Below, piece by piece: positions 15,042 to 44,713 of a DNA stretch of 64,000 nucleotides. Under the pieces are notes generated by a model. The model had not been told where the DNA came from and searched no databases. It saw nothing but the letters and a program-made list of their open reading frames with translations. The stretch covers positions 1 to 64,000 of IMG/VR virus record IMGVR_UViG_3300026521_000471, one strand, 5' to 3'. Numbering within the stretch: the stretch's first letter is position 1; every line of letters starts with the position of its first letter. The position numbers were made by a program, and so were the translations under genes.

Positions 15042-16229
15042 TTATTTCTTTCTCAGTTTATTTTTTAATTCTTCTATTTGCTTAATTTTTTTCTCAGTAA
15101 TATCTTGTTTGATTGAAATATAACCAATCTTTACCCCATCTTTATCATAATATGGTGAAATCACATTATTTGACCAATAAGCACCACCATTTTTCTTTTT
15201 AGATTTAATTTCTCCTACCCAGTTTTTATCCGCTTCAATAGTTTCCCATAATTTCTTAAAAACATTTGCATTCATATCCGGATGTCTTATAATATTATGT
15301 GGTTCGCCTAATAATTCTGTTTTTGAATAGCCTGTTGTTTTACAAAAAGCTGATGATACATCTACAATTACTCCAAATAAATTCGTCTTGGTAAATATGA
15401 CATGTTTTTCAAAATCAGAATGCATACTAGTTAGTTGTGTATTAAGAATATCATTTTGTGTCATTAAGTCCGAAAAATCTTTGCTGTATTCATCGGCGAT
15501 TTTTTCATTTTCAAAATCAGCCCTTTCTTTTATTTTAATCATTGAATATATATAAATTATTCCAGAAATAAGCATGATCATAGAGACAATGAATAAAACA
15601 AATAACTGTAAATGTTTAATATTATCATTAATATCATTTATTGGTATCGTAGCTTCAGTAACCCCTCTAGCATCCCCTATTTTCCATTTAAAATCCCAAG
15701 TCTTTAACGGGTGGTGATTATGGCATTGGACACAAGATTTATTAGTCATATATTCGGTTTTCGCATACGTTAGATAATCTGTCCCGTCCTTTTCCGTTCT
15801 TAAAAATAGTTCCTTATGACCCTTTATATTTTTTAAGACCTTCAGCTGTAATTTTGTCAGAACTCTATCAGATTGATTTTTAAATGGAAAATTACTATAA
15901 ACAGATATACGTAAATTTGGATCGTCTATCATTGAAGCTACATCATGCATAAATGTTGCAGGATACGGTATTGTATTATTATCTTTATGTTCTGTACTAA
16001 ATTTTATACCATTAATATTATATATATCATCAACTACGTATTTGGCATAGTATTCTTTCGTTTTTAAAAGTAGATTTACTACTGATTTAGTTTTATCTTC
16101 TGCTAAATCAACTGCATATTCATGCATTTTATATGGAATAAAGACGTAAAGTGATATTAATGTAACAATATAAGATATAGTCACTCCAATTAAAAATTTA
16201 TTAGAAAACATTTGTAAAATATTTTTCAT
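15042..16229 (-). CDS. membrane sensor: periplasmic c-type heme domain (DUF3365/Tll0287-like) plus cytoplasmic PAS, no output domain
   Basis: TM helix, IPYPATF, YSNFPFKN, CVQCH (CxxCH), WKIGDARG, TM helix, PAS (HNIIRHPDM...LWETI...WVGEIKS); start at ATG 16229 after GAGGGA. Confidence 0.85.
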   Translation of the reverse strand: MKNILQMFSNKFLIGVTISYIVTLISLYVFIPYKMHEYAVDLAEDKTKSVVNLLLKTKEYYAKYVVDDIYNINGIKFSTEHKDNNTIPYPATFMHDVASMIDDPNLRISVYSNFPFKNQSDRVLTKLQLKVLKNIKGHKELFLRTEKDGTDYLTYAKTEYMTNKSCVQCHNHHPLKTWDFKWKIGDARGVTEATIPINDINDNIKHLQLFVLFIVSMIMLISGIIYIYSMIKIKERADFENEKIADEYSKDFSDLMTQNDILNTQLTSMHSDFEKHVIFTKTNLFGVIVDVSSAFCKTTGYSKTELLGEPHNIIRHPDMNANVFKKLWETIEADKNWVGEIKSKKKNGGAYWSNNVISPYYDKDGVKIGYISIKQDITEKKIKQIEELKNKLRKK

Positions 16230-16293
16230 AAGTCCCTCAGTTTGTTGATTTATCAACTTATTTATTTTCGGATTTACTTTCTTTAATTTATGA

Positions 16294-16315
16294 TTAAGGT
16301 CTAATATAATATAAT
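16294..16315 (+). promoter_or_regulatory. class I promoter TTAAG-N11-TATAAT
   Basis: Motif match upstream of 16338. Confidence 0.65.
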
Positions 16316-16337
16316 ATAAAAAATTAAAAAAGGATAT

Positions 16338-16736
16338 ATGATGCATATACGTAGTTTAGATTATTTTGATAAAGTGGGTCTGGTAACAAGCGGACTCTCT
16401 ATTTTTATTTCAAGTATTTTTTTACTTATGAGTTTTAGTTATTTAACAGAGAATTATTTAGTTATTTTAGGGTTGGTAAGTATTTCTTTAGTCCTAAATA
16501 ATTACTACCTTACCATAACTACACCAGAAATATTTAAAAAGATTAATGATGATCCCTGGAAATTTATTTTAGAACAAAGACCTATACTCGGACCTATTGC
16601 CGTTTTATTAAGTTTTTTATTAATAGGGACATTAATTAGTGGTAATCTTTTTGCATGGCAAATATATATTATATATTTTATTATGCTTATGCTTATGAAT
16701 CATACCTATTCAAAAAAATATAAACTTAGAGATTAG
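16338..16736 (+). CDS. membrane protein (about 4 TM)
   Basis: Hydrophobic segments. Confidence 0.7.
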   Translation: MMHIRSLDYFDKVGLVTSGLSIFISSIFLLMSFSYLTENYLVILGLVSISLVLNNYYLTITTPEIFKKINDDPWKFILEQRPILGPIAVLLSFLLIGTLISGNLFAWQIYIIYFIMLMLMNHTYSKKYKLRD

Positions 16737-26841: not shown

Positions 26842-28137
26842 GTGGAAAATATTGATATAGGTATTATTGATGTAGAATCTTTAAAAACCTTAAATAAAAT
26901 TTTAGAATCAAAAAAAGAATATATTATAAATTATTGGCTAGATGATGAAAAACTCAAGCCAATTTTTGAGATGTTGGAAATAGAAAAAGAAACATTTAAA
27001 AGCAAATACGCATATCATATTTTTCATCATTTTCAATCCATTGATTATGATAATATGTATTTTAAAACATATATCGATGAAATGGAAGACAAACAGCATT
27101 TAATAAAATATTTTTACCGATTAATCGCTCATCTAAAGAATAAGATTATATTATTTTTAATACAGTATAACATAGATAACAATGATAAAATATTTATGGA
27201 TGATTCACTGCTATATACGATTGATAATGCTATATCTGAATTATTAGATTCTATAACAAAACATCTTCAAAGAGATTATACTGCAAATACAAAAAAATTA
27301 AAGATATTAGAAAATGCTGCATTAGTTACTAGAACTGATAAAGACGGTAGCATATTATTTATGAGCCCACCATTATTAGAGTTACTAGGATATTCAGAAG
27401 AGGAAATGCTTGGAGCAGGTTTTAATAAAATCAGACATCCCAGAGTTTCTTCTAAATTTTATGAAAAACTATGGAGGACATTAAAATCTGGTAAACCTTT
27501 CAAAGGGACTATTAAAAATTTAACTAAGAATAGAAAAGAAGTAATATTTCATACACAAATTGTTCCTGATTTTAATTTTGATGGAGAAATAGTTGGTTAT
27601 ACAGCTATAAAAACAGATTTAACCGATAAAACAAGAGCAAGAACTGACACATTAACAGGTCTTTTAAATCGTTCAGCATTTAATGATCGATTATCTGAAC
27701 TTATAGATAGATATAACAATTTTCATATTCCAGTTTCTTTAATAATGATTGATATTGATTATTTTAGTGAAGTAAATAATAACTACGGTCATATTACTGG
27801 TGATAAAACTCTAAAACATTTTGTTAAACTAATTAAAGAGATAATTAGACCTACTGATACATTTGCAAGATGGGGAGGGGAAGAATTTATTATAATTCAA
27901 AATAATACATTAGATAATTCTATTAAAACTGCTGAAAGAATAAGAAAACATATAGCAGAAAGCACGTTCCCAGAAGTAGGACAAAAAACATGTAGTCTAG
28001 GTGTGGCAGAATTTAATAATAGTTATGCAGATATAGATTCATTTATAAATGAACTTGATAAAGCATTATATTATTCAAAAGAACATGGACGTAATAAGGT
28101 CTCATACGTAGTTAAAAATGGTATAGAATCTGTTTAA
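26842..28137 (+). CDS. PAS-GGDEF diguanylate cyclase
   Basis: PAS (FNKIRHP...LWRTL), DTLTGLLNR, DIDYFSEVNNNYGHITGD, I-site RPTD, active site RWGGEEF. Confidence 0.93.
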   Translation: MENIDIGIIDVESLKTLNKILESKKEYIINYWLDDEKLKPIFEMLEIEKETFKSKYAYHIFHHFQSIDYDNMYFKTYIDEMEDKQHLIKYFYRLIAHLKNKIILFLIQYNIDNNDKIFMDDSLLYTIDNAISELLDSITKHLQRDYTANTKKLKILENAALVTRTDKDGSILFMSPPLLELLGYSEEEMLGAGFNKIRHPRVSSKFYEKLWRTLKSGKPFKGTIKNLTKNRKEVIFHTQIVPDFNFDGEIVGYTAIKTDLTDKTRARTDTLTGLLNRSAFNDRLSELIDRYNNFHIPVSLIMIDIDYFSEVNNNYGHITGDKTLKHFVKLIKEIIRPTDTFARWGGEEFIIIQNNTLDNSIKTAERIRKHIAESTFPEVGQKTCSLGVAEFNNSYADIDSFINELDKALYYSKEHGRNKVSYVVKNGIESV

Positions 28138-32305: not shown

Positions 32306-33604
32306 ATGGCAAAAAAAACATACACAGTTATTGAACGTAATGGACATAAATATAATCTTTTAGCACTACCAGATACAAATTTTTTTAAGTTTGAAATAAT
32401 TAATTTGTGGGGTTCTAATATCGAACGTTTGTATGAAACAAAGTTTGGTAAAAATGTTTATGGTATCTCTCACTTTATAGAACACTTAGGTTTTAGAAAC
32501 CCCAAAGATTTCAGTACAGCAGAACTTTTAAACCATTTGAAAAACGACGGTACTTATAATGCTTCAACAGATTATGACCGCATCAATTATTGGTTTCAAA
32601 CTACAATGGATAGAGTTGATTTAGCTATAAAATTAGTTGCAAACTATGCTTTAAATACATTAGATAATATCCCATCAGATGAATTTGAAATCGAAAAGAA
32701 AGTAGTGTATAATGAAGCGAAACGTTATGCTGATGATGACCAAACGATGTTTTGGTTTAATAGTACTAGAGCACTAACAGGTTATAAAGAAGAAGATAAT
32801 ATTATAGGTATTCCTGAAACAATTGACACTTTTGAAATTGATGATTGTATAAGAATTAAAGATTTATTTTTAAGTAATGCACAAAATATTTTTAATGTTA
32901 CTTACGATCCAAGTATTCTAACTGCCAATGAAGTAATCGATAAGATAGAGCTTGAACTACATAGACATAAACCATTAGGTATTATGGATAAAATTTCTGA
33001 AGAAGAATATAAAGGAGTTGTAATTCAACCTAAACATATCAAAACTACGTTGAGTAATGAGAGTGAACAACATATAACTTATCTAAATTTTGATATTGTT
33101 GAAAATATAGAGGTTGCAAGAGCCGGAAATCAATATTTAGCAAGATATGCCGAAGGAACTTCTTTAGATGATGTAATTAGAGAGCAGAACGGTCTAACTT
33201 ATGGAATTACGTTAGGTGCAGCAAACATTTCGTATAAACCATATACTTATTTTGGGTGTGATGTTTCAAAAGGCGATGAGGAACTACTACTTAAATTATT
33301 TAAAGAAAGTATTAATGCTTCAGTTGATGCTTGGAATGAGAAAACACATAAAAAATTTATGGACGCTAAAAAATTGAAAAGAGTTATGAATTTATTAGAC
33401 CAAAAAAATTATGGTGGTTGGCATAATAATGGGACATGGTATCCAGAGATTATTGAAGAAATGAAAGAAGTATTAGCAACAGATTTAGATAATGCATATG
33501 AAGTCGCAGATGAAAAATATGCTACTGTTGAAAGAGTAAGAGATTATTTAGAAAAATTTAGAAAAGCAGTCAATGAAGATGATTTTGCATTAGTAACAAA
33601 TTGA
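32306..33604 (+). CDS. M16 (insulinase) family zinc peptidase
   Basis: GISHFIEHL (HxxEH), NASTDYD, EKKVVYNE, IREQNGLTY. Confidence 0.9.
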   Translation: MAKKTYTVIERNGHKYNLLALPDTNFFKFEIINLWGSNIERLYETKFGKNVYGISHFIEHLGFRNPKDFSTAELLNHLKNDGTYNASTDYDRINYWFQTTMDRVDLAIKLVANYALNTLDNIPSDEFEIEKKVVYNEAKRYADDDQTMFWFNSTRALTGYKEEDNIIGIPETIDTFEIDDCIRIKDLFLSNAQNIFNVTYDPSILTANEVIDKIELELHRHKPLGIMDKISEEEYKGVVIQPKHIKTTLSNESEQHITYLNFDIVENIEVARAGNQYLARYAEGTSLDDVIREQNGLTYGITLGAANISYKPYTYFGCDVSKGDEELLLKLFKESINASVDAWNEKTHKKFMDAKKLKRVMNLLDQKNYGGWHNNGTWYPEIIEEMKEVLATDLDNAYEVADEKYATVERVRDYLEKFRKAVNEDDFALVTN

Positions 33605-36813: not shown

Positions 36814-38268
36814 ATGAATGAAAATGATGTTAAAGAAGAAATTAAAGAAGCTTGGAAAGATTTAAAAAACGGTACAAAAGTTAAAGCTAAGCTTACTGAA
36901 AAAATGGATGAGAAGCTCGACGGTTTAGTAGCAGCAGCAAAAGCTGGAAATTGGAAAACTCAGCTGGAAGAAGCAATAGTACAGATGATTACTTATAATT
37001 ATTCAAGTAATGAAAGTTTAATGTGGTATGGACATTTAGTAACTCAATGTGAAATAAAAAGAGATTTAACTATGCCAAGTCCTGCTGGGGTAAGATTTAT
37101 GTTTAATAAATACGAGATGTTTATTAATCCTTTACTTTTTGGTTTATATTCAACCGATGAACAAATTGCTATATTGAAACATGAAATGTTACATATTATC
37201 AATTTGCACATTGTAAGACAAAAAGATAGAGACCATAAAAAATGGAATTATGGTACTGATTTATCTATCAACCAATTAATCCCAAACATTCCTGAAGATG
37301 GATTACAACCTGAAAAATTTGATTTTGCAAAAAACCTTAATGCAGAACAGTATTATGATATGATACCTACAAACTATGAGAGTGAAGAACCTCAAGAAGG
37401 TAATGAAGACGGTGAGGGTGGTGGAAGTTGTTCTGCACAAGGTTCCGGAGATGGAGAGCCACAAGATGGTGATGGTTCTGGAAACGGTGATGGTTCTGAT
37501 GTAATTGATGATGAGAAAAAACTTAAAGATCTAATCTCCCAAGCATTAAATGCAGCTCAAGAAGGAATGATTGGTGATCATGGTAAGTGGCAAAATTCTG
37601 AAGGTGATGAACAGGCCGCAAAAGAAATTACAAGACAGATGTGTGAAACAGCTACTAATAAATCCAGAGGTATGACACCAGGTGAAGTAGAAGGAGCAAT
37701 CCAATTACTTAAAATGCAGGAGCAAATTAACTGGAAGAAAGAGCTGAGAAGAATTGTTGGTAATAGAAAAGCATTTTCTAAACTTACAATTAAGAAAAAT
37801 GATAGAAGATTTCCAGGTCGTAAGGATTTAAGAGGTAAAACAAAAGATCATACAAAAGATATTGTAGTTATCTTAGATGTATCGGGTTCTATGAGTGATG
37901 AGGAAGTTCTCTATGGTTTAAATGAAATTAAGGCTATTGCAGAAAAAGCTAGAGCTGGGGTTACTATTATTCAAGTTGATACAGAGCCAAAAATTGTAGA
38001 AGATTTTGATCCAAAAGCAAAAACTTTTAATCGTAGAGGTTATGGTGGTACTTATATGACTCCTGGAATTGAAATGATTAAGGAACAGAAATTAAAATGT
38101 GACTGTATTTTGTGTATAACTGATGGTTACATTGAATCAACTTTTGATATTGATTTACCAAGAGTACCATTTATTTTCTTAGTTACACAAGATGCAGATA
38201 ATTTATCTATTGATGTAGGTTCATATCCGAGAATGAAAAAACATACATTGAAAATTGGTGATAAGTAG
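36814..38268 (+). CDS. DUF2201-type HExxH metallopeptidase plus VWA domain protein
   Basis: LKHEMLHI, WNYGTDLSIN, G/D-rich linker, MIDAS DVSGS, GYGGT, TDGY. Confidence 0.9.
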   Translation: MNENDVKEEIKEAWKDLKNGTKVKAKLTEKMDEKLDGLVAAAKAGNWKTQLEEAIVQMITYNYSSNESLMWYGHLVTQCEIKRDLTMPSPAGVRFMFNKYEMFINPLLFGLYSTDEQIAILKHEMLHIINLHIVRQKDRDHKKWNYGTDLSINQLIPNIPEDGLQPEKFDFAKNLNAEQYYDMIPTNYESEEPQEGNEDGEGGGSCSAQGSGDGEPQDGDGSGNGDGSDVIDDEKKLKDLISQALNAAQEGMIGDHGKWQNSEGDEQAAKEITRQMCETATNKSRGMTPGEVEGAIQLLKMQEQINWKKELRRIVGNRKAFSKLTIKKNDRRFPGRKDLRGKTKDHTKDIVVILDVSGSMSDEEVLYGLNEIKAIAEKARAGVTIIQVDTEPKIVEDFDPKAKTFNRRGYGGTYMTPGIEMIKEQKLKCDCILCITDGYIESTFDIDLPRVPFIFLVTQDADNLSIDVGSYPRMKKHTLKIGDK

Positions 38269-39469: not shown

Positions 39470-39654
39470 TTGTAGATGTAGATAAAAAGGCAATCCAACA
39501 ACAAATAAAGTTTTTAGTTAAAATAATAAACCAATATCAAAAAAGATTAGAAACTGAACCTCAATTTTTAACTAGAGAAGTTGAAGAAAATTTAGAAAGA
39601 GCTAAAGCAAAATATGATTATATTATTAAAGAATATCCAGACTTAATCATCTAG
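39466..39654 (+). CDS. small protein with PE-tail (YPDLII)
   Basis: Terminal motif; ATGA overlap. Confidence 0.7.
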   Translation: MIVDVDKKAIQQQIKFLVKIINQYQKRLETEPQFLTREVEENLERAKAKYDYIIKEYPDLII

Positions 39655-41301
39655 ACTATTTTTTAAATCTAATATATTACCGAATGATTTTTTATGAGTT
39701 ATTTGAGCAAAAATATTTTTCATATCATTACCTGAAAGATGACCTCGTTCTGCTTCTCTCATTAAATTTTTTGTTATTTTAAACTCGCCATTATATTTAA
39801 ATAATTCAAATGCTAAATTTATAATATGACCTTGTATTTGTAACGTATTAGAAGCACTAGCATATCCAAATTCTCTGGCTACTGCAATAATTTTTTTCAT
39901 GTTTTGTGGCATATTCCAAATACTAAAAAGCTTCTCAACAGCGTGTAAATTATTAAATCCTAATAGATTCATTTCTAAACTAGTTATAGATTTTGACGAT
40001 TTTTGTAAATTTTTAAAACGATCTACTCTCTCATTAATAATTAAAGCCTGATTTGTCAGGAGCATACCTAGTGGTAATATATGCATAACAGCAGTTAAAT
40101 CATCTTTATCATCTTGGGGTATATCTATAAATTTAATCCATTCTGAAACAAATTTAACTCGGTATTTTGAAACTTCAATTAACTCTTCTAATGAAATATC
40201 ATATGCGTCTAAATATAAACTGTCAAATGTTTCGTTAGCTACCTCTGTTATTGCTAATGCCCCTATTTGTTTTTTACCTAGTAATGATACAGCAATAGAG
40301 ATTTTTGATACTCGATTTGGTAGGCCTATATACGGGGAATTAATTTCCCGTAAAATAATTGCTGAGAACATTGGATCTTGTTCAACAACTTTTACTATTT
40401 GGTTGATATTTGAATTGCTATCAAAACACAATTCTTTTAACTTAGTTAATGTACTAGGTAAAGGTTCAATTGCTTCAGCTAGTTCAACTAATGTAATCTG
40501 CCCTTTATTAATAGGTATTTCAATCTCCGTATTACTACGTTCATATTTTTTAACAATCATAGTCTTAAAATCAGCCATTTTCATATTATGTGTATTATAA
40601 ACATTTTCGATTGCTAATTTTTCTTTAACTAAGTTTAAAGAACTTTCTTTACTGAATTTACTCAAAACATATAAATTTTCAAAATCGAATTCAATATCAT
40701 TTAAACAAACTATGAGATCTATGATATGCCCATCGGGGTATTTTAAATCAGTTATTAAAATTTTTTTACCGGGCATTTTTATAAGGTCAATTGCCTCGGA
40801 TTTAGTAGAAACACTATCCACAAATTTAAATTTTGTACTAAGAATTTCTGTTAATAATTTTGATACTTTTGGATCTCGATTAAGGATCACAATATCATAA
40901 TATTCATTAAGTTTTGGGGAAGTGTAATTTTTACATTGAACGATTGGCGCAGTATCAAATTCAATAGCATAAAATTCTGGATCTTCATGTTGTTGAATTT
41001 GAGTTACCCACCTTTCAATTTGAATAGAAAAGTTTTCAAACCAATTAATCACATCTTGATTAAAAGCACAAGTATAATTTTTTATAAAAAACAAAATATC
41101 TTCTGTTTTTTCAAGGAGAATAGAAATTTCTTCAAATTTATGATAGTAAGTAATAGCTTTTAATGAATGTATCGACCTAAATAATGTGTCGATCAATTTT
41201 GATGAATTAATTTCATCATTTCTAAAATCAATAATAGTGTTATTAATAATTATAGACAAATTATCTAATCTTATAATATAATCTTCAAGTTCTTCAGTCA
41301 T
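39643..41301 (-). CDS. Hpt + receiver-like + HDOD signalling protein
   Basis: CheA-P1-like LFRSIHSLKA; REC-like ILITDLKYPDG; HDOD PLPSTL...VEQDPMFSAIILREINSP...AVSLLG...WNMP. Confidence 0.85.
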   Translation of the reverse strand: MTEELEDYIIRLDNLSIIINNTIIDFRNDEINSSKLIDTLFRSIHSLKAITYYHKFEEISILLEKTEDILFFIKNYTCAFNQDVINWFENFSIQIERWVTQIQQHEDPEFYAIEFDTAPIVQCKNYTSPKLNEYYDIVILNRDPKVSKLLTEILSTKFKFVDSVSTKSEAIDLIKMPGKKILITDLKYPDGHIIDLIVCLNDIEFDFENLYVLSKFSKESSLNLVKEKLAIENVYNTHNMKMADFKTMIVKKYERSNTEIEIPINKGQITLVELAEAIEPLPSTLTKLKELCFDSNSNINQIVKVVEQDPMFSAIILREINSPYIGLPNRVSKISIAVSLLGKKQIGALAITEVANETFDSLYLDAYDISLEELIEVSKYRVKFVSEWIKFIDIPQDDKDDLTAVMHILPLGMLLTNQALIINERVDRFKNLQKSSKSITSLEMNLLGFNNLHAVEKLFSIWNMPQNMKKIIAVAREFGYASASNTLQIQGHIINLAFELFKYNGEFKITKNLMREAERGHLSGNDMKNIFAQITHKKSFGNILDLKNSLDD

Positions 41302-41469
41302 TACATTAAAAACCTATTTTAATTTTATTTATAATGAATATGCAATATTTTCCCAGTCAATGTCATTCCATGTCAAATACATTTTACCCTCCTATTTTTG
41401 GTATCTATAAAATATTTATATTAATTATAATATATTTTAAGCAAAAATCTGATTAAATTTTAAGCAAAA

Positions 41470-42027
41470 TTATTTACGTTTCATTATAATTTGCCCTTTA
41501 ACATTAACTAATGATTTTTTTCTAGTTAATTTATGCTCCCTTATAAAAATTTTAGAACGATATTCATAAGCATTATAAATTTCATCTCCAATTTTCAAAC
41601 TTATAAGTTGTTCTCTATAAAGTGATGCTAATCGTTCATCTGTTATATTCCATATTTCACCAAAATGAGCAAGTCGTACTCTTTCAGCAAGTACTTGAAA
41701 ATCATCAATACTAATATTTTTCTTTTTTAATTCTTCTTCTTTTTCTGGAGTAATTACAAATCTTTTATTTTTATCTTCATGAAAAACTAACTTAGTGTAT
41801 GCTGGATATTTTACAGCATCAACTTTTGTATGACCAAATCGTAATATCGGTTGTTTATTTTTAAAACGTTCAATATAGTCAATATCCATAAGATGCCAGG
41901 TATTTTGATGTTCAAAATTTGGATATGAAATAGCAATAAGTGACCACTCTTTTTTATCATGATATTTATAAAATTCATTCTTTAATTCGAGAAGTATTTC
42001 GTTTAAATTATGATAATATTCATTCAT
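41470..42027 (-). CDS. hypothetical protein
   Basis: AAGGGA RBS; TATAAATA at 42051-42058 (minus). Confidence 0.65.
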   Translation of the reverse strand: MNEYYHNLNEILLELKNEFYKYHDKKEWSLIAISYPNFEHQNTWHLMDIDYIERFKNKQPILRFGHTKVDAVKYPAYTKLVFHEDKNKRFVITPEKEEELKKKNISIDDFQVLAERVRLAHFGEIWNITDERLASLYREQLISLKIGDEIYNAYEYRSKIFIREHKLTRKKSLVNVKGQIIMKRK

Positions 42028-42065
42028 ATATTTCCCTTTTTATTTTAAATTATTTATATTTTTTT

Positions 42066-42109: not shown

Positions 42110-43682
42110 ATGGCAAAAGAGAAATTTGTTAGGGGTGAAAAACCTCATGTTAATGTGGGAACAGTAGGGCATAGACTATGTGCCATCTCTTGGTAACAAG
42201 GGATTAAAAAGAGTTTAAATTGTCTGGAAACCCCTAAAGCTTCTTTTACTAAAACAGAGCCAGAAATGGCATATGGTATAGTTAATGAAAATTAGAAAGA
42301 AAAAAGAAGATGGAATATGTGGAAACGCTAAGTTCTTTATAATGGGCAATCAGCAGCCAAGTTACCTAACTCAAATATATTGAGATTTCTATGTGAATAG
42401 AATTTAAGGTAGAAGGTTCAGAGACTGTAATAACTCAGTCCGTTAATCTTAATTGAATTTCGGATTATGGTACAGTCCAGACTACAACAACTTTACTTAG
42501 TTAGTTGGCTTATGAAAGTAAGTGTAGTAATTGGTAGATCATGGCAAGACTACTTTAACTGCAGCAATTACAGCAGTAATGGCAGTTAAAAACGGTGCAG
42601 CATTTATGGATTACGATCAAATCGATAATGCACCAGAAGAAAGAGAAAGAGGTATCACTATTGCTACTTCTCATGTTGAATATGAAACTGATAAAAGACA
42701 TTATGCTCATGTTGATTGTCCAGGTCACGCAGATTATGTTAAAAATATGATTACTGGTGCTGCACAAATGGATGGTGCTATTCTTGTTATTGCTGCTACT
42801 GATGGACCTATGGCTCAAACGAGAGAACATATCCTTCTTTCAAAACAAGTTGGTGTACCAGCAATTGTTGTTTTTATGAACAAAGAGGACCAACTTGATG
42901 ATGAAGATAAAGATGAAATGGCTGAACTTGTAGAAATGGAGATTAGAGAACTTCTTGACCAATACGGTTTTGATGGTGATAACACTCCTGTTATTCTTGG
43001 TAGTGCATTTCAAGCTCTTGAAGAAGCAAAAACCGGTACTTTAGGTGAGTGGTCAGAAAAGATTGTACAACTTATGGATTCAGTAGATGAGTGGATTCCA
43101 GAACCAGTTAGAGATACTGATAAGGATTTCTTAATGCCTATTGAAGATGTATTCTCAATTGCAGGTAGAGGTACAGTTGTTACTGGTAAAATTGAGAGAG
43201 GTACAATCAAACTTGGTGAAACAGTAGAAATTGTAGGTATTAAAGACACTCAAACATCAACTGTTACAGGAATTGAGATGTTCCGTAAAGAGATGGAAGA
43301 AGGTTTAGCTGGGGATAATGCAGGTATTCTTCTAAGAGGAATTTCAAAAGATGATGTTGAAAGAGGTCAAGTTCTTTGTAAACCTGGTTCAATAACACCA
43401 CATACAAAGTTCAAAGCGGAAGTTTATGTTCTAAGTAAAGATGAGGGTGGTCGTCATACTCCATTCTTTAATAATTATAGACCTCAGTTCTATTTCTATA
43501 CATCTGATATTACTGGTGCAATTACACTAGAAGAAGGTGTTGAAATGGCTATGCCTGGTGATAATGTGACTATTACGGTAGAACTTATTGCTCCAATGGC
43601 TATCGAAAAAGGAACAACTTTTGCTATTAGAGAAGGTGGTAGAACTGTCGGCTCTGGTATGATTGGAGAAATTATCGAGTAA
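42110..43682 (+). CDS. tuf: elongation factor Tu, two exons: join(42110..42172,42534..43682), 403 aa
   Basis: Exon 1 [21 protein letters not shown] plus exon 2 VDHGKTT; [30 protein letters not shown]. Confidence 0.97.
42173..42533 (+). ncRNA. group I intron (361 nt, no ORF) in the tuf P-loop
   Basis: P1 GGCAU/GUGCC with U.G at the splice site; P10 CUAU/GUAG; GGGCAATCAGCAGCCAAG; GTTCAGAGACTG and ACAGTCC (P7); terminal G; removal restores GHVDHGKT. Confidence 0.95.
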
Positions 43683-43738: not shown

Positions 43739-44713
43739 ATGATAGATTATACAAGATGGAACACATTTCTACCAGTAGATTTGGGCTATGGAGATGTTAA
43801 AATCGCCCTTAAAAAAGAAGATGGTACTTTAATGATTGCTAAGTATCCGTCAGCAGTAGCTAAAGTCAATCCAAAGAGATTTGGTGCCGGCGAAGCAGTT
43901 GAATTTGAAGGCGATTATTACTTAATTGGCGAGAATGCTATAAACTACAAACCCGTAGAAATGAATGATTATGAAACATTAGAAAAGTACGCACCATTAC
44001 TTATTTTTCATGCATTTAGAAAATATGGAGAATTCAATACTATTGTAACAGGACTTTCAATTAGACAAGAGGATAATTCTCAATCATTTAAAGATAGGCT
44101 TTCTAGTTTTGAAATTGATGGTCAAGAATATAATATGGATGTAAAATTACTACCCCAAGGTATTGGAGCTAAAATTGTAGTACAAAAACAATTTAATGAA
44201 ATCCAAAACTATTTAGTTTGTGATGGTGGCTTTAATACTGTTGATTTAGTTCCTGTATTTGATGGAAAAGCAGATTTACACTCTGTTGATGCTTTAGAAA
44301 ATAGAGGCATTATTGAGGTTGTAAATGAATTAATTGAATATATTGCAGGTGAGTATAATATAGAACTATCACCAAAAGAAGCTAAGTATGCCTTAGATAA
44401 TCAACGCATTGATATTTATGGAAAAGAAATTGATTTAACAGATATTATTGCACATATTACAACAGATTATTCTAAAGACTTAGTAAGACAAATAGAAAGA
44501 AAGTTTAAAAAATCATGGCATAAATTCCAAAAAGTTATTATTGTTGGTGGGTTATCTCATTTTGTAGATGCTTCTGTTTATGAACATTTAGCAACTGTAC
44601 CTAAAGGTGAATACTTTAATGCTGTTGGGTTCCACCAATACGCTGATGAAAAATTAGGGGATACGACACCTCAAAAACCAAAGGTTACTAGAAGACGAGT
44701 GAGTAAACTCTAA
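43739..44713 (+). CDS. ParM/StbA-family actin-like ATPase
   Basis: VDLGYGDVK (phosphate 1), TGLS, LPQGIG, CDGGFNTVD (phosphate 2), IVGG, NAVGF. Confidence 0.88.
   Translation: MIDYTRWNTFLPVDLGYGDVKIALKKEDGTLMIAKYPSAVAKVNPKRFGAGEAVEFEGDYYLIGENAINYKPVEMNDYETLEKYAPLLIFHAFRKYGEFNTIVTGLSIRQEDNSQSFKDRLSSFEIDGQEYNMDVKLLPQGIGAKIVVQKQFNEIQNYLVCDGGFNTVDLVPVFDGKADLHSVDALENRGIIEVVNELIEYIAGEYNIELSPKEAKYALDNQRIDIYGKEIDLTDIIAHITTDYSKDLVRQIERKFKKSWHKFQKVIIVGGLSHFVDASVYEHLATVPKGEYFNAVGFHQYADEKLGDTTPQKPKVTRRRVSKL

What the first reader, a model, noticed from the sequence alone, without database searches (positions are those of the whole stretch)
39643..41333. Hpt-REC-HDOD fusion with a late-type promoter
Seen: CheA-P1-like His (HSLKA), a receiver-like domain keeping the phospho-Asp (ITDL), and a C-terminal HDOD domain; no kinase domain; TATAAATA at 41326-41333. 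Inference: a phosphate sink or relay that taps host chemotaxis/two-component signalling. This architecture is unusual for a phage.
Basis: partly seen in the sequence, partly recalled or inferred. Interest (0 to 1): 0.6.

Follow-up and report, generated by a model that had tools for sequence, protein, structure and literature searches.

The report
Phage copy of a motility-signalling protein
A giant virus of hydrothermal-vent bacteria carries a signalling protein of bacterial type with three domains: a CheA-like phosphate carrier, a worn-down receiver and a non-enzymatic HDOD output. It has kept this protein under strong selection and most likely uses it to interfere with its host's swimming and attachment signalling.

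Summary
Window 39643-41301 (minus strand) is one 552-aa gene of a 224-kb jumbo phage. It has a CheA-P1-type Hpt domain (His45/Lys48/Glu67), a receiver-fold middle domain and a C-terminal HDOD domain, and no kinase. TATAAATA at 41326-41333 belongs to a real upstream motif class in this genome.

The architecture is not a phage invention. Dozens of bacterial proteins of about 530 aa, apparently mostly from Campylobacterota, align with it end to end, and those whose neighbours could be read sit among housekeeping genes.

The phage copies form their own well-supported clade. They are under strong purifying selection (dN/dS 0.095) and keep the upstream motif.

In the phage clade the receiver has lost the acidic pocket and the conserved lysine, and the "phospho-Asp" is serine in two members. 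A receiver-based phosphate sink is therefore unlikely. The Hpt catalytic network is nearly invariant, and the HDOD lacks the HD dyad.

The phage also encodes three intact GGDEF cyclases, a GGDEF-EAL protein and a PAS sensor.

My best reading is that host CheA-type phosphoryl flux reaches the Hpt in trans and is converted, through a pseudo-receiver, into a non-catalytic HDOD output on motility and c-di-GMP behaviour. This mechanism is inferred, not shown.

The parts
39643..41301 (-). Gene for the 552-aa Hpt / receiver-like / HDOD protein (P0001)
   Evidence: ORF. The N-terminus MTEELEDY is conserved in homologues. dN/dS is 0.095 against the sibling phage.
40981..41301 (-). CheA-P1-type Hpt four-helix bundle, residues 1-107
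   Evidence: Models. VIA Z 15.3 to CheA3 P1 (3kyj), 14.3 to 1i5n, 12.9 to 1tqg. Foldseek's top ten matches are all CheA P1 or a design that aligns like one. Profile against PDB.
41167..41169 (-). Codon of His45, the predicted phospho-accepting histidine (FRSIHSLKA)
   Evidence: Aligns to the His of FRALHTLKG in T. maritima CheA P1, with Lys at +3 and Glu at +22. His is present in 59 of 61 family members.
40537..40905 (-). Receiver-fold domain, degenerate (pseudo-receiver), residues 133-255
   Evidence: (beta-alpha)5 fold in the model. Matches solved receivers at TM 0.68-0.77. N141-R142-D143 replaces the acidic pair and there is no K-P after beta5. No Pfam Response_reg match.
40747..40749 (-). 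Codon of Asp185 (ITDL), at the C-terminal end of beta3
   Evidence: Its position in the model is the phospho-Asp position. It is Asp in 4 and Ser in 2 of the six closest homologues.
39652..40491 (-). HDOD domain, residues 271-550, non-catalytic
   Evidence: Pfam HDOD 73.5 bits. Cj0248 (1vqr) E 8.5e-24 over 271-535. Foldseek matches 1vqr, 3mem, SadB 9qzk and MmoQ. HILPLG stands where an HD dyad would be, and no His is conserved.
41326..41333 (-). TATAAATA promoter-like motif, 24 nt before the ATG
   Evidence: Genome-wide enrichment and orientation bias. No conserved -35 element. (T/C)ATAAATA is kept before orthologues in L002, L018, L021 and L043.
41313..41315 (-). Weak Shine-Dalgarno-like AGG, 11 nt before the ATG
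   Evidence: Read directly from the sequence.
41470..42027 (-). Upstream same-strand gene (185 aa, no known family), with its own TATAAATA at 42051-42058. It is context only. No functional link is shown.
   Evidence: The pairing is kept in the sibling phage only.

Best explanation
The gene is a phage-borne member of a bacterial family of Hpt / receiver / HDOD signalling proteins, apparently mostly from Campylobacterota. A lineage of hydrothermal-vent jumbo phages carries it and has kept it under selection.

Shown:
- the three folds;
- the near-invariant CheA-P1 reactive network (His45, Lys48, Glu67);
- the loss of the receiver's metal and phosphate pocket in the phage clade;
- the absence of an HD catalytic dyad in the HDOD;
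- chromosomal homologues;
- a single well-supported phage clade;
- purifying selection on all three domains;
- a phage-specific upstream motif;
- a companion set of c-di-GMP genes in the same phage.

Inferred mechanism:
1. After infection the protein is made from a non-early phage promoter.
2. Its P1-like domain is phosphorylated in trans by a host CheA-type kinase core, or by back-transfer from a host CheY-like receiver.
3. The phosphorylation state is passed through the pseudo-receiver to the HDOD domain.
4. The HDOD acts by binding a partner rather than by catalysis, and changes flagellar motility or attachment. It does so in concert with the phage's own diguanylate cyclases and phosphodiesterase.
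5. Drawing phosphoryl groups away from CheA would by itself also lower CheY phosphorylation.
For: Architecture and folds.

The residues F41, R42, H45, K48 and E67 are at least 90% conserved in 61 full-length relatives. They align to the same motif in T. maritima, Salmonella and E. coli CheA P1.

The best structural match is the P1 domain of R. sphaeroides CheA3. From my own knowledge, that protein is phosphorylated in trans by another CheA.

Family: about 60 representatives of 518-565 aa align end to end. Pfam finds HDOD in 61 of 61, Hpt in 37 and Response_reg in 20.

Chromosomal contexts. The nearest ESM Atlas cluster has Hpt and HDOD, and Campylobacterota is the commonest phylum among the 15 of its 75 members whose phylum is on record.

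The phage clade is monophyletic, with SH-aLRT 100. It shares synteny with DUF2201 and M16 peptidase genes.

dN/dS is 0.095 overall, and 0.09, 0.12 and 0.08 for the three domains.

The promoter motif is conserved before orthologues and is a class distinct from the sigma70-like early promoters.

c-di-GMP genes in the same phage: four GGDEF domains, three of them with intact GG[DE]EF motifs, and one EAL. A distant phage homologue is directly followed by a GGDEF-EAL gene.

HDOD proteins studied so far affect motility or attachment: Cj0248, GsmR, SadB, PFL_0554/5871 and PSPTO_4229 (PMC11004494, PMC11813219, PMC6543031, PMC12075610).
Against: - No phosphotransfer, binding or phenotype has been measured.
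- The host and its CheA are unknown.
- The one complex prediction (Hpt with C. jejuni CheY) gave no answer.
- Pfam's own Hpt and Response_reg models do not match this protein.
- The biochemical function of HDOD is unknown. SadB acts as a protease adaptor and did not bind c-di-GMP in one study (PMC12075610), whereas it did bind it in another (PMC6543031).
- None of the three chromosomal homologues whose neighbours could be read lies in a chemotaxis operon, although one has an MCP gene and a GGDEF gene nearby.
- The conserved His could serve a phosphorelay unrelated to chemotaxis.
Confidence: 0.4

Rival explanations
1. This is the first reader's version, a phosphate sink or relay through the receiver. 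Phosphoryl groups would pass from host proteins to His45 and on to Asp185 within the same protein, and would be lost there by hydrolysis. That would drain host chemotaxis or two-component signalling.
For: Asp185 sits at the end of beta3, in the phospho-Asp position, and is kept in 10 of 13 phage-clade members. Ser214 is at the beta4 position. Some chromosomal relatives keep a DD pair and a K-P motif and match Pfam Response_reg, so an intramolecular relay is plausible in the ancestral protein.
Against: The acidic pair that binds Mg2+ is N-R-D here, with an invariant basic residue. The conserved Lys after beta5 is missing. Asp185 is Ser in P0005 and P0006, whose His45 is intact. Pfam Response_reg finds nothing in the whole phage genome, even at E 1.
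Confidence: 0.15
2. A component of a c-di-GMP circuit. The HDOD domain would bind c-di-GMP, or would dock on the phage's or host's GGDEF/EAL enzymes. The protein would tune the c-di-GMP programme that the phage imposes, with the Hpt as a regulatory input unrelated to chemotaxis.
For: The phage has four GGDEF domains and one EAL domain. A GGDEF-EAL gene lies directly downstream of the distant phage homologue P0006. GGDEF or EAL-HDOD genes lie near chromosomal homologues. SadB of P. fluorescens was reported to bind c-di-GMP (PMC6543031).
Against: In the window the gene is not adjacent to any GGDEF or EAL gene; the nearest is 11.5 kb away. SadB of P. aeruginosa did not bind c-di-GMP (PMC12075610). 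The P1-specific Lys and Glu network points to a CheA-type kinase partner.
Confidence: 0.2
3. A proteolysis adaptor of the SadB type. The HDOD domain, together with the N-terminal domains, would deliver a host regulator of motility or biofilm formation to a host protease.
For: SadB (9qzk) is among the structural matches of the HDOD part. SadB acts as an adaptor for AmrZ degradation without ligand binding (PMC12075610).
Against: SadB's N-terminal domain is YbaK-like, not Hpt plus receiver. The structural match is far weaker than the match to Cj0248. This reading does not explain the conserved His/Lys/Glu network.
Confidence: 0.08
4. A passenger gene with no role in the phage, recently picked up from a host chromosome and not yet lost.
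For: Homologues are chromosomal. The gene lies on the minority strand among small genes of unknown function.
Against: The phage clade has 13 representative clusters down to 28% identity. It is monophyletic and sits on a long stem. dN/dS is 0.095. A promoter-like motif of the phage's own class is conserved before orthologues. The phage is found in vent and epibiont samples from four studies.
Confidence: 0.03

Closest known systems
Chromosomal Hpt / receiver / HDOD proteins of about 530 aa, apparently mostly from Campylobacterota (uncharacterised; machine-annotated as 'HD-like signal output (HDOD) protein / HPt'), for example P0155, P0024 and P0018
   Same: They have the same three domains in the same order and align end to end. 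They share the FR..H..K..E motif and the conserved HDOD residues.
   Different: They are only 15-23% identical to the phage protein, on the other side of a long, fully supported branch. They sit among housekeeping genes. Several keep canonical receiver residues (DD, K-P) that the phage clade has lost.
Cj0248 of Campylobacter jejuni (PDB 1vqr), a stand-alone HDOD protein
   Same: It is the best solved relative of residues 271-535 (E 8.5e-24; Foldseek rank 1). Mutants have altered motility (cited in PMC11004494).
   Different: Cj0248 has no Hpt and no receiver domain. It is a chromosomal gene.
CheA P1 domains, in particular the split CheA3/CheA4 system of Rhodobacter sphaeroides (PDB 3kyj)
   Same: The fold matches (Z 15.3) and the reactive His/Lys/Glu network is aligned. 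From my own knowledge, the P1 of CheA3 is phosphorylated by a kinase on another polypeptide.
   Different: There are no P2 to P5 domains. P1 is fused to a pseudo-receiver and an HDOD domain. No kinase partner has been identified.
Receiver-HDOD response regulators (GsmR of Xanthomonas campestris; MmoQ, PDB 3p3q)
   Same: A receiver fold lies directly before an HDOD output. GsmR controls flagellar synthesis (cited in PMC6543031 and PMC11004494).
   Different: Those proteins have a canonical receiver and no Hpt domain. Here the receiver pocket is degenerate and a P1-type Hpt is added.
SadB of Pseudomonas (PDB 9qzk)
   Same: Its HDOD domain lacks the metal-binding histidines. It acts through protein contacts on motility and biofilm formation (PMC12075610).
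   Different: Its N-terminal domain is YbaK-like. It is not encoded by a phage.
Phage proteins that interfere with host two-component or c-di-GMP signalling (PIT4 of phage LSL4, PMC10714779; YfiN-binding peptides, PMC8085984)
   Same: They are products of lytic phages aimed at host signal transduction.
   Different: By their abstracts, one is an early phage protein that inhibits host systems and the others are peptides that bind a host cyclase. I did not compare their sequences with this protein. This one is a full-size, host-type, multi-domain signalling protein.
T4-type late promoter TATAAATA
   Same: The octamer is identical, there is no -35 element, and it lies a short way before the genes.
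   Different: The timing is unknown. No gp55-like factor was sought. In a genome with 72% A+T it could equally be an extended -10 element for a host sigma factor.

Membership tests
CheA-P1-type Hpt domain | Antiparallel helical bundle of the P1 type | tested here: met
   The model has pLDDT 92.3. VIA Z is 15.3, 14.3, 14.1, 12.9 and 11.7 to CheA P1 domains, against 10.9 or less for unrelated bundles. All of the top ten Foldseek matches are CheA P1 or BRIC1, a designed repeat protein that aligns like E. coli CheA P1.
CheA-P1-type Hpt domain | Phospho-accepting His in the motif FRxxH[ST]xK[GA], with Lys at +3 and Glu at +22 | tested here: met
   H45, K48 and E67 align to the same residues of T. 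maritima and enteric CheA P1. They are at least 90% conserved in 61 relatives.
CheA-P1-type Hpt domain | Match to Pfam Hpt (PF01627) at the curated cut-off | tested here: not met
   P0001 has no match. Of 61 relatives, 37 match at E 0.01 or better. P0011, from the phage clade, scores 28.3 bits against a cut-off of 24.6.
CheA-P1-type Hpt domain | His is actually phosphorylated by a kinase or a receiver | not testable with these tools
   This needs biochemistry. The complex prediction with C. jejuni CheY gave no answer.
Receiver domain (REC, PF00072) | (beta-alpha)5 fold | tested here: met
   Strands and helices at 135-253. Foldseek TM 0.68-0.77 with rmsd 2.5-3.7 A to solved receivers.
Receiver domain (REC, PF00072) | Acidic pair after beta1 that binds Mg2+ | tested here: not met
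   The residues are N141-R142-D143. The pattern is [NFH]-[RK]-[DE] in the six closest homologues.
Receiver domain (REC, PF00072) | Phospho-accepting Asp at the end of beta3, conserved | tested here: inconclusive
   D185 is present here and in 10 of 13 phage-clade members. It is Ser in P0005 and P0006.
Receiver domain (REC, PF00072) | Conserved Lys (K-P) after beta5 | tested here: not met
   The sequence is VYNTHNMK. There is no Lys at that position in the phage clade, while K-P is present in several chromosomal relatives.
Receiver domain (REC, PF00072) | Match to the Pfam model | tested here: not met
   There is none in the protein or anywhere in the phage genome. Of 61 relatives, 20 match; in the three read in detail the match lies at about 138-249, the same position.
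HDOD domain (PF08668) | Match to the Pfam model above the cut-off | tested here: met
   73.5 bits against a cut-off of 22.9, residues 280-475; 75.6 bits in the genome scan.
HDOD domain (PF08668) | All-helical HD-like fold without the catalytic His-Asp dyad | tested here: met
   Matches to 1vqr, 3mem, 9qzk and 3p3q. H407-I408 stands where the HD dyad would be, and no His is conserved in the domain.
T4-type late promoter | TATAAATA at a short distance before the gene, over-represented and oriented with genes | tested here: met
   31 of 76 copies lie in the upstream zone, an 11.8-fold excess with p 2e-25. 33 are in the gene's orientation and 12 in the opposite one.
T4-type late promoter | Drives late (structural, lysis) genes and depends on a phage late factor | tested here: inconclusive
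   The genes that carry the motif and could be named are GGDEF and GGDEF-EAL proteins, endonuclease VII and a homing endonuclease. No structural genes could be identified. The class is separate from the sigma70-like cluster at 190-222 kb. No gp55-like factor was sought.
Chemotaxis phosphate sink (CheY2 or CheV type) | A phosphorylatable receiver that accepts phosphate from CheA and loses it | tested here: not met
   The receiver pocket is incomplete. A sink acting through the His alone cannot be excluded.

The most novel reading that the evidence does not exclude
A lineage of hydrothermal-vent jumbo phages carries a whole behaviour-control kit: three diguanylate cyclases, a phosphodiesterase, a PAS sensor and this P1 / pseudo-receiver / HDOD protein. 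The last would be the first phage-encoded mimic of the CheA P1 domain. It would take phosphoryl groups from the host chemotaxis kinase in trans, so that the infected cell stops navigating and switches between swimming and attachment to the phage's advantage.
Probability: 0.25. Interest if true: 0.75.

Novelty: new variant of a known kind. Interest (0 to 1): 0.5.

Why it matters
Phages are known to carry metabolic genes, but cases where they carry full-size host signalling proteins aimed at behaviour are rare. I found no report of an HDOD protein or of a CheA-P1-type Hpt domain in a phage.

The biochemical role of the HDOD domain is still unknown, although its link to motility has been seen repeatedly. 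A compact phage version under strong selection offers two things:
- It gives a simple test of whether phosphorylation of a P1 domain can drive an HDOD output. The receiver in this version has already lost its phosphorylation pocket.
- It gives an entry point to the uncharacterised chromosomal family.

It also suggests that vent epibiont phages manipulate the motile-sessile switch of their hosts.

Tried and rejected
- Megablast of the locus against 50,697 phage records found nothing. tblastn of the protein found only a weak 70-residue HDOD match in Pseudomonas phage Y10.
- Pattern scans of IMG/VR and of 185,579 species genomes found no relative. These scans need exact short peptide patterns, so the blanks are weak evidence.
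- Pfam models for terminase, tail sheath and T4 gp23 found nothing in the genome. PHROG scans of 30 further large or motif-bearing proteins named no structural gene. The temporal class of the TATAAATA motif could therefore not be fixed.
- The sigma70 consensus scan around the gene was at chance level, 30 sites against 28 expected. A TTGACT lies 21 nt before the octamer, which is too far for a standard promoter.
- The complex prediction of Hpt (1-128) with C. jejuni CheY returned 'no answer'. It is not evidence either way.
- The upstream 185-aa gene has no family in Pfam, PHROGs or the ESM Atlas and is paired with the gene only in the sibling phage. I do not treat it as a partner.
- I rejected the idea that the HDOD is a phosphohydrolase, because there is no HD dyad and no conserved His.
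Full report
WHAT IS THERE

The window is the first 64 kb of a 224,467-bp IMG/VR virus record. It has 28% G+C and an estimated completeness of 85%. At 39643-41301 on the minus strand lies one 552-aa ORF, P0001. It runs against the prevailing gene direction.

DOMAINS

Pfam sees only the HDOD domain (residues 280-475, E 2e-20). The other two domains are real but divergent.

A profile of the six closest homologues matches three kinds of solved structure:
- Cj0248 of Campylobacter jejuni, over residues 271-535 (E 8.5e-24);
- CheA P1 domains, over residues 1-120;
- receiver domains, weakly, over residues 135-249.

An AlphaFold model of the whole protein (pLDDT 75) shows a four-helix bundle at 3-103, a (beta-alpha)5 unit at 135-253 and a helical domain at 271-550. 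Foldseek matches the last domain to Cj0248, Maqu_0641, SadB and MmoQ. It matches the middle domain to many receivers at TM 0.68-0.77.

A separate model of residues 1-128 has pLDDT 92. Its best matches are CheA P1 domains and BRIC1, a designed repeat protein that aligns like E. coli CheA P1. This holds for Foldseek (top ten, TM 0.71-0.75) and for the exhaustive aligner. In the latter, Z is 15.3 for R. sphaeroides CheA3 P1, 14.3 for Salmonella, 12.9 for T. maritima, and 10.9 or less for unrelated bundles.

A ten-sequence profile of this domain matches T. maritima CheA P1 at E 6e-9. It aligns FR..H..K and the Glu 22 residues later to the corresponding CheA residues. From my own knowledge, these are the residues that tune the reactivity of the phospho-accepting histidine towards the CheA kinase domain.

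THE RECEIVER IS DEGENERATE

Asp185 sits at the end of beta3, the phospho-Asp position. The rest of the pocket is not there. The acidic pair after beta1 is N-R-D, with an invariant basic residue, and the K-P after beta5 is missing. Asp185 itself is Ser in two of the six closest homologues, both of which keep His45. Pfam Response_reg finds nothing in the whole phage genome, even at E 1. In the HDOD domain there is no HD dyad and no conserved histidine, so no hydrolase activity is expected.

RELATIVES

The word-based search found only five full-length relatives, all from metagenomes. The exhaustive HMMER search changed the picture. It returned 5,721 hits, and among the best 150 about 60 cluster representatives of 518-565 aa align end to end. 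Of 61 of these, all match Pfam HDOD, 37 match Hpt and 20 match Response_reg. In the members read in detail, each match lies at the position of the corresponding domain.

Three of the more distant members could be placed in their genomic context. All three lie among housekeeping genes: adenylate kinase, MoaC and ThiG in one case, EF-P, MinDE and TatC in another, UvrA in the third. In one case there are two tandem paralogues near an MCP gene and a GGDEF gene.

The nearest ESM Atlas cluster has 75 members and carries HDOD plus Hpt. Campylobacterota is the commonest phylum among the 15 members whose phylum is on record. The architecture is therefore a bacterial one, uncharacterised but already machine-annotated.

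THE PHAGE CLADE

In a quick maximum-likelihood tree, the 13 representatives closest to the window protein form one clade with SH-aLRT 100, on a stem of 1.31 substitutions per site. The clade is separate from the 46 chromosomal-type rows. The careful search did not finish, so only SH-aLRT support is available.

Where context exists, members of this clade lie on phage-like contigs. These contigs share DUF2201, M16-peptidase or RlaP genes with the window.

Against the 88%-identical sibling phage, dN/dS is 0.095 overall. It is 0.09, 0.12 and 0.08 for the three domains.

DNA of the locus occurs in runs labelled hydrothermal vent metagenome and epibiont metagenome, from four studies. No RNA run holds it.

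PROMOTER

TATAAATA occurs 76 times in the genome, fewer than composition predicts. Yet 31 copies lie 8-60 nt before a same-strand start codon, an 11.8-fold excess (p 2e-25). Their distances to the ATG cluster at 14-32 nt.

A second, quite different class has the form TTGACTTTTTA...TATGTTATAAT, a sigma70-type -35 element plus an extended -10. It is concentrated at 190-222 kb in two divergent blocks, which is the likely early region.

The target gene, its 185-aa upstream neighbour, a GGDEF gene and the GGDEF-EAL gene all carry the TATAAATA class. (T/C)ATAAATA is also found before orthologues in four other phage contigs whose coding sequences are only 19-88% identical.

The motif is thus very probably a promoter of a non-early class. 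I could not show that it is 'late', because no structural genes could be recognised.

CONTEXT IN THE PHAGE

The genome encodes four GGDEF domains:
- a PAS-GGEEF protein at 26842-28137;
- a GGDEF protein at 116056-116805;
- a GGDEF protein at about 191.9 kb, in the early region;
- an SGDEF-EAL protein at 151851-154028, with intact EAL and DDFGTG motifs.

It also encodes a Tll0287-PAS protein. It has no histidine kinase and no canonical receiver. In a distant phage homologue, a GGDEF-EAL gene directly follows the HDOD gene.

HOW IT MOST LIKELY WORKS

Three features are shown: a conserved CheA-type reactive histidine, a receiver that can probably no longer be phosphorylated, and a non-catalytic HDOD domain.

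The HDOD proteins studied so far affect flagellar motility or attachment. They are Cj0248, GsmR, SadB, two P. protegens genes and PSPTO_4229. Overexpression of PSPTO_4229 abolishes swimming, and the gene's fitness profile groups it with the chemotaxis genes (PMC11004494, PMC11813219, PMC6543031, PMC12075610).

I infer the following. The P1-like domain is charged in trans by a host CheA-type kinase core, or by back-transfer from a CheY-like protein. This state is relayed through the pseudo-receiver to the HDOD domain, which binds a host or phage partner and shifts motility and attachment alongside the phage's c-di-GMP enzymes. The precedent for a P1 domain phosphorylated from another polypeptide is the CheA3/CheA4 pair of R. 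sphaeroides (my own knowledge). Its P1 is the best structural match.

I give this 0.4. The rivals are a sink acting through Asp185 (0.15), a c-di-GMP circuit component independent of chemotaxis (0.2), a SadB-like protease adaptor (0.08) and a functionless passenger gene (0.03).

COMPARISON AND NOVELTY

The protein is a member of the HDOD family and, by fold and motif, of the CheA-P1 class of Hpt domains. Its middle domain has the receiver fold but fails three defining features of a phosphorylatable receiver. It belongs to an existing but uncharacterised bacterial architecture.

What is new is a selected, monophyletic phage branch of that family, with a degenerate receiver, embedded in a phage c-di-GMP toolkit. 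I found no report of an HDOD or P1-type Hpt protein in a phage, no PHROG family for it, and essentially nothing in 50,697 phage records. I rate it a new variant of a known kind, with interest 0.5.

LIMITS

- The host is inferred only from the taxa of look-alike clusters, the low G+C content and the sample labels.
- The alignment of the receiver region across the 61 sequences is unreliable outside the phage clade.
- The tree is the quick one.
- All mechanistic steps are inference.
- The EF-Tu gene next door appears to be split by an intron. I examined its exons by reference only, and did not build or search the joined product.

Noticed in passing
window 42110-43682 (+): The phage EF-Tu gene is interrupted inside the P-loop codons. 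Exon 1 is 42110-42172 and ends in ...CAT. A 361-nt insert follows at 42173-42533 and ends in G. Exon 2 starts at 42534. The sibling phage has the uninterrupted 403-aa gene. Rfam's group I intron model matches 42221-42426 below its threshold (20 bits, E 0.012), including the conserved GUUCAGAGACU core. The insert folds with z -2.5. I did not build the joined product.
   Followed up: partly
window 26842-28137 (+) and 15042-16346 (-); G000:C1 116056-116805, 151851-154028, about 191935-192228 (-): The phage carries its own c-di-GMP set: a PAS-GGEEF protein, two further GGDEF proteins with intact motifs, an SGDEF-EAL protein with intact EAL and DDFGTG motifs, and a Tll0287-PAS sensor.
   Followed up: partly
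G000:C1 190000-222000: There is a cluster of about 20 near-identical sigma70-type promoters (TTGACTTTTTA...TATGTTATAAT). They lie on the minus strand left of about 207 kb and on the plus strand right of about 210 kb. This is probably a divergently transcribed early region.
   Followed up: partly
window 43739-44713 (+): An Alp7A/ParM-like actin gene lies directly after EF-Tu. It is conserved in the sibling phage.
   Followed up: no
G000:C1 94364-96214, 121726-123351, 132675-134048: The phage has further host-like genes: an aspartyl-tRNA synthetase (40% identical to aspS of other jumbo phages), GroEL and topoisomerase II.
   Followed up: no
G000:C1 97868-99421, 100580-101929, 101930-103519, 112040-113350, 126668-127999, 128012-129322: There are six paralogues of one PHROG family of unknown function (phrog_10773), each 436-529 aa.
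   Followed up: no
L002 12358-13875 and L003 12358-13875: The sibling phage has a TnpB-like gene (Cas12f1-like_TNB, 505 aa) inserted two genes away from the HDOD gene. It is absent at the corresponding place in the window.
   Followed up: no
L003 7999-9209: In one assembly of the sibling phage the EF-Tu gene is called as two ORFs (129 and 278 aa). This is either a frameshift or an assembly error.
   Followed up: no
P0016 (4858 aa) and P0097 (1950 aa): Two very long proteins repeat, 26 and 14 times, a unit that matches the His-bearing helix region of the Hpt profile (positions 21-70). They may be giant multi-Hpt proteins, or the match may be a repeat artefact.
   Followed up: no
L019 8855-12115: One bacterial chromosome carries two tandem paralogues of the Hpt / receiver / HDOD protein (542 and 543 aa). 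They lie three to four genes from a GGDEF gene and an MCP-CZB gene.
   Followed up: no
window 32306-33604 and 36814-38268 (+): An M16 peptidase gene and a DUF2201 (metallopeptidase plus VWA-like) gene are syntenic with the HDOD gene in several related phage contigs.
   Followed up: no
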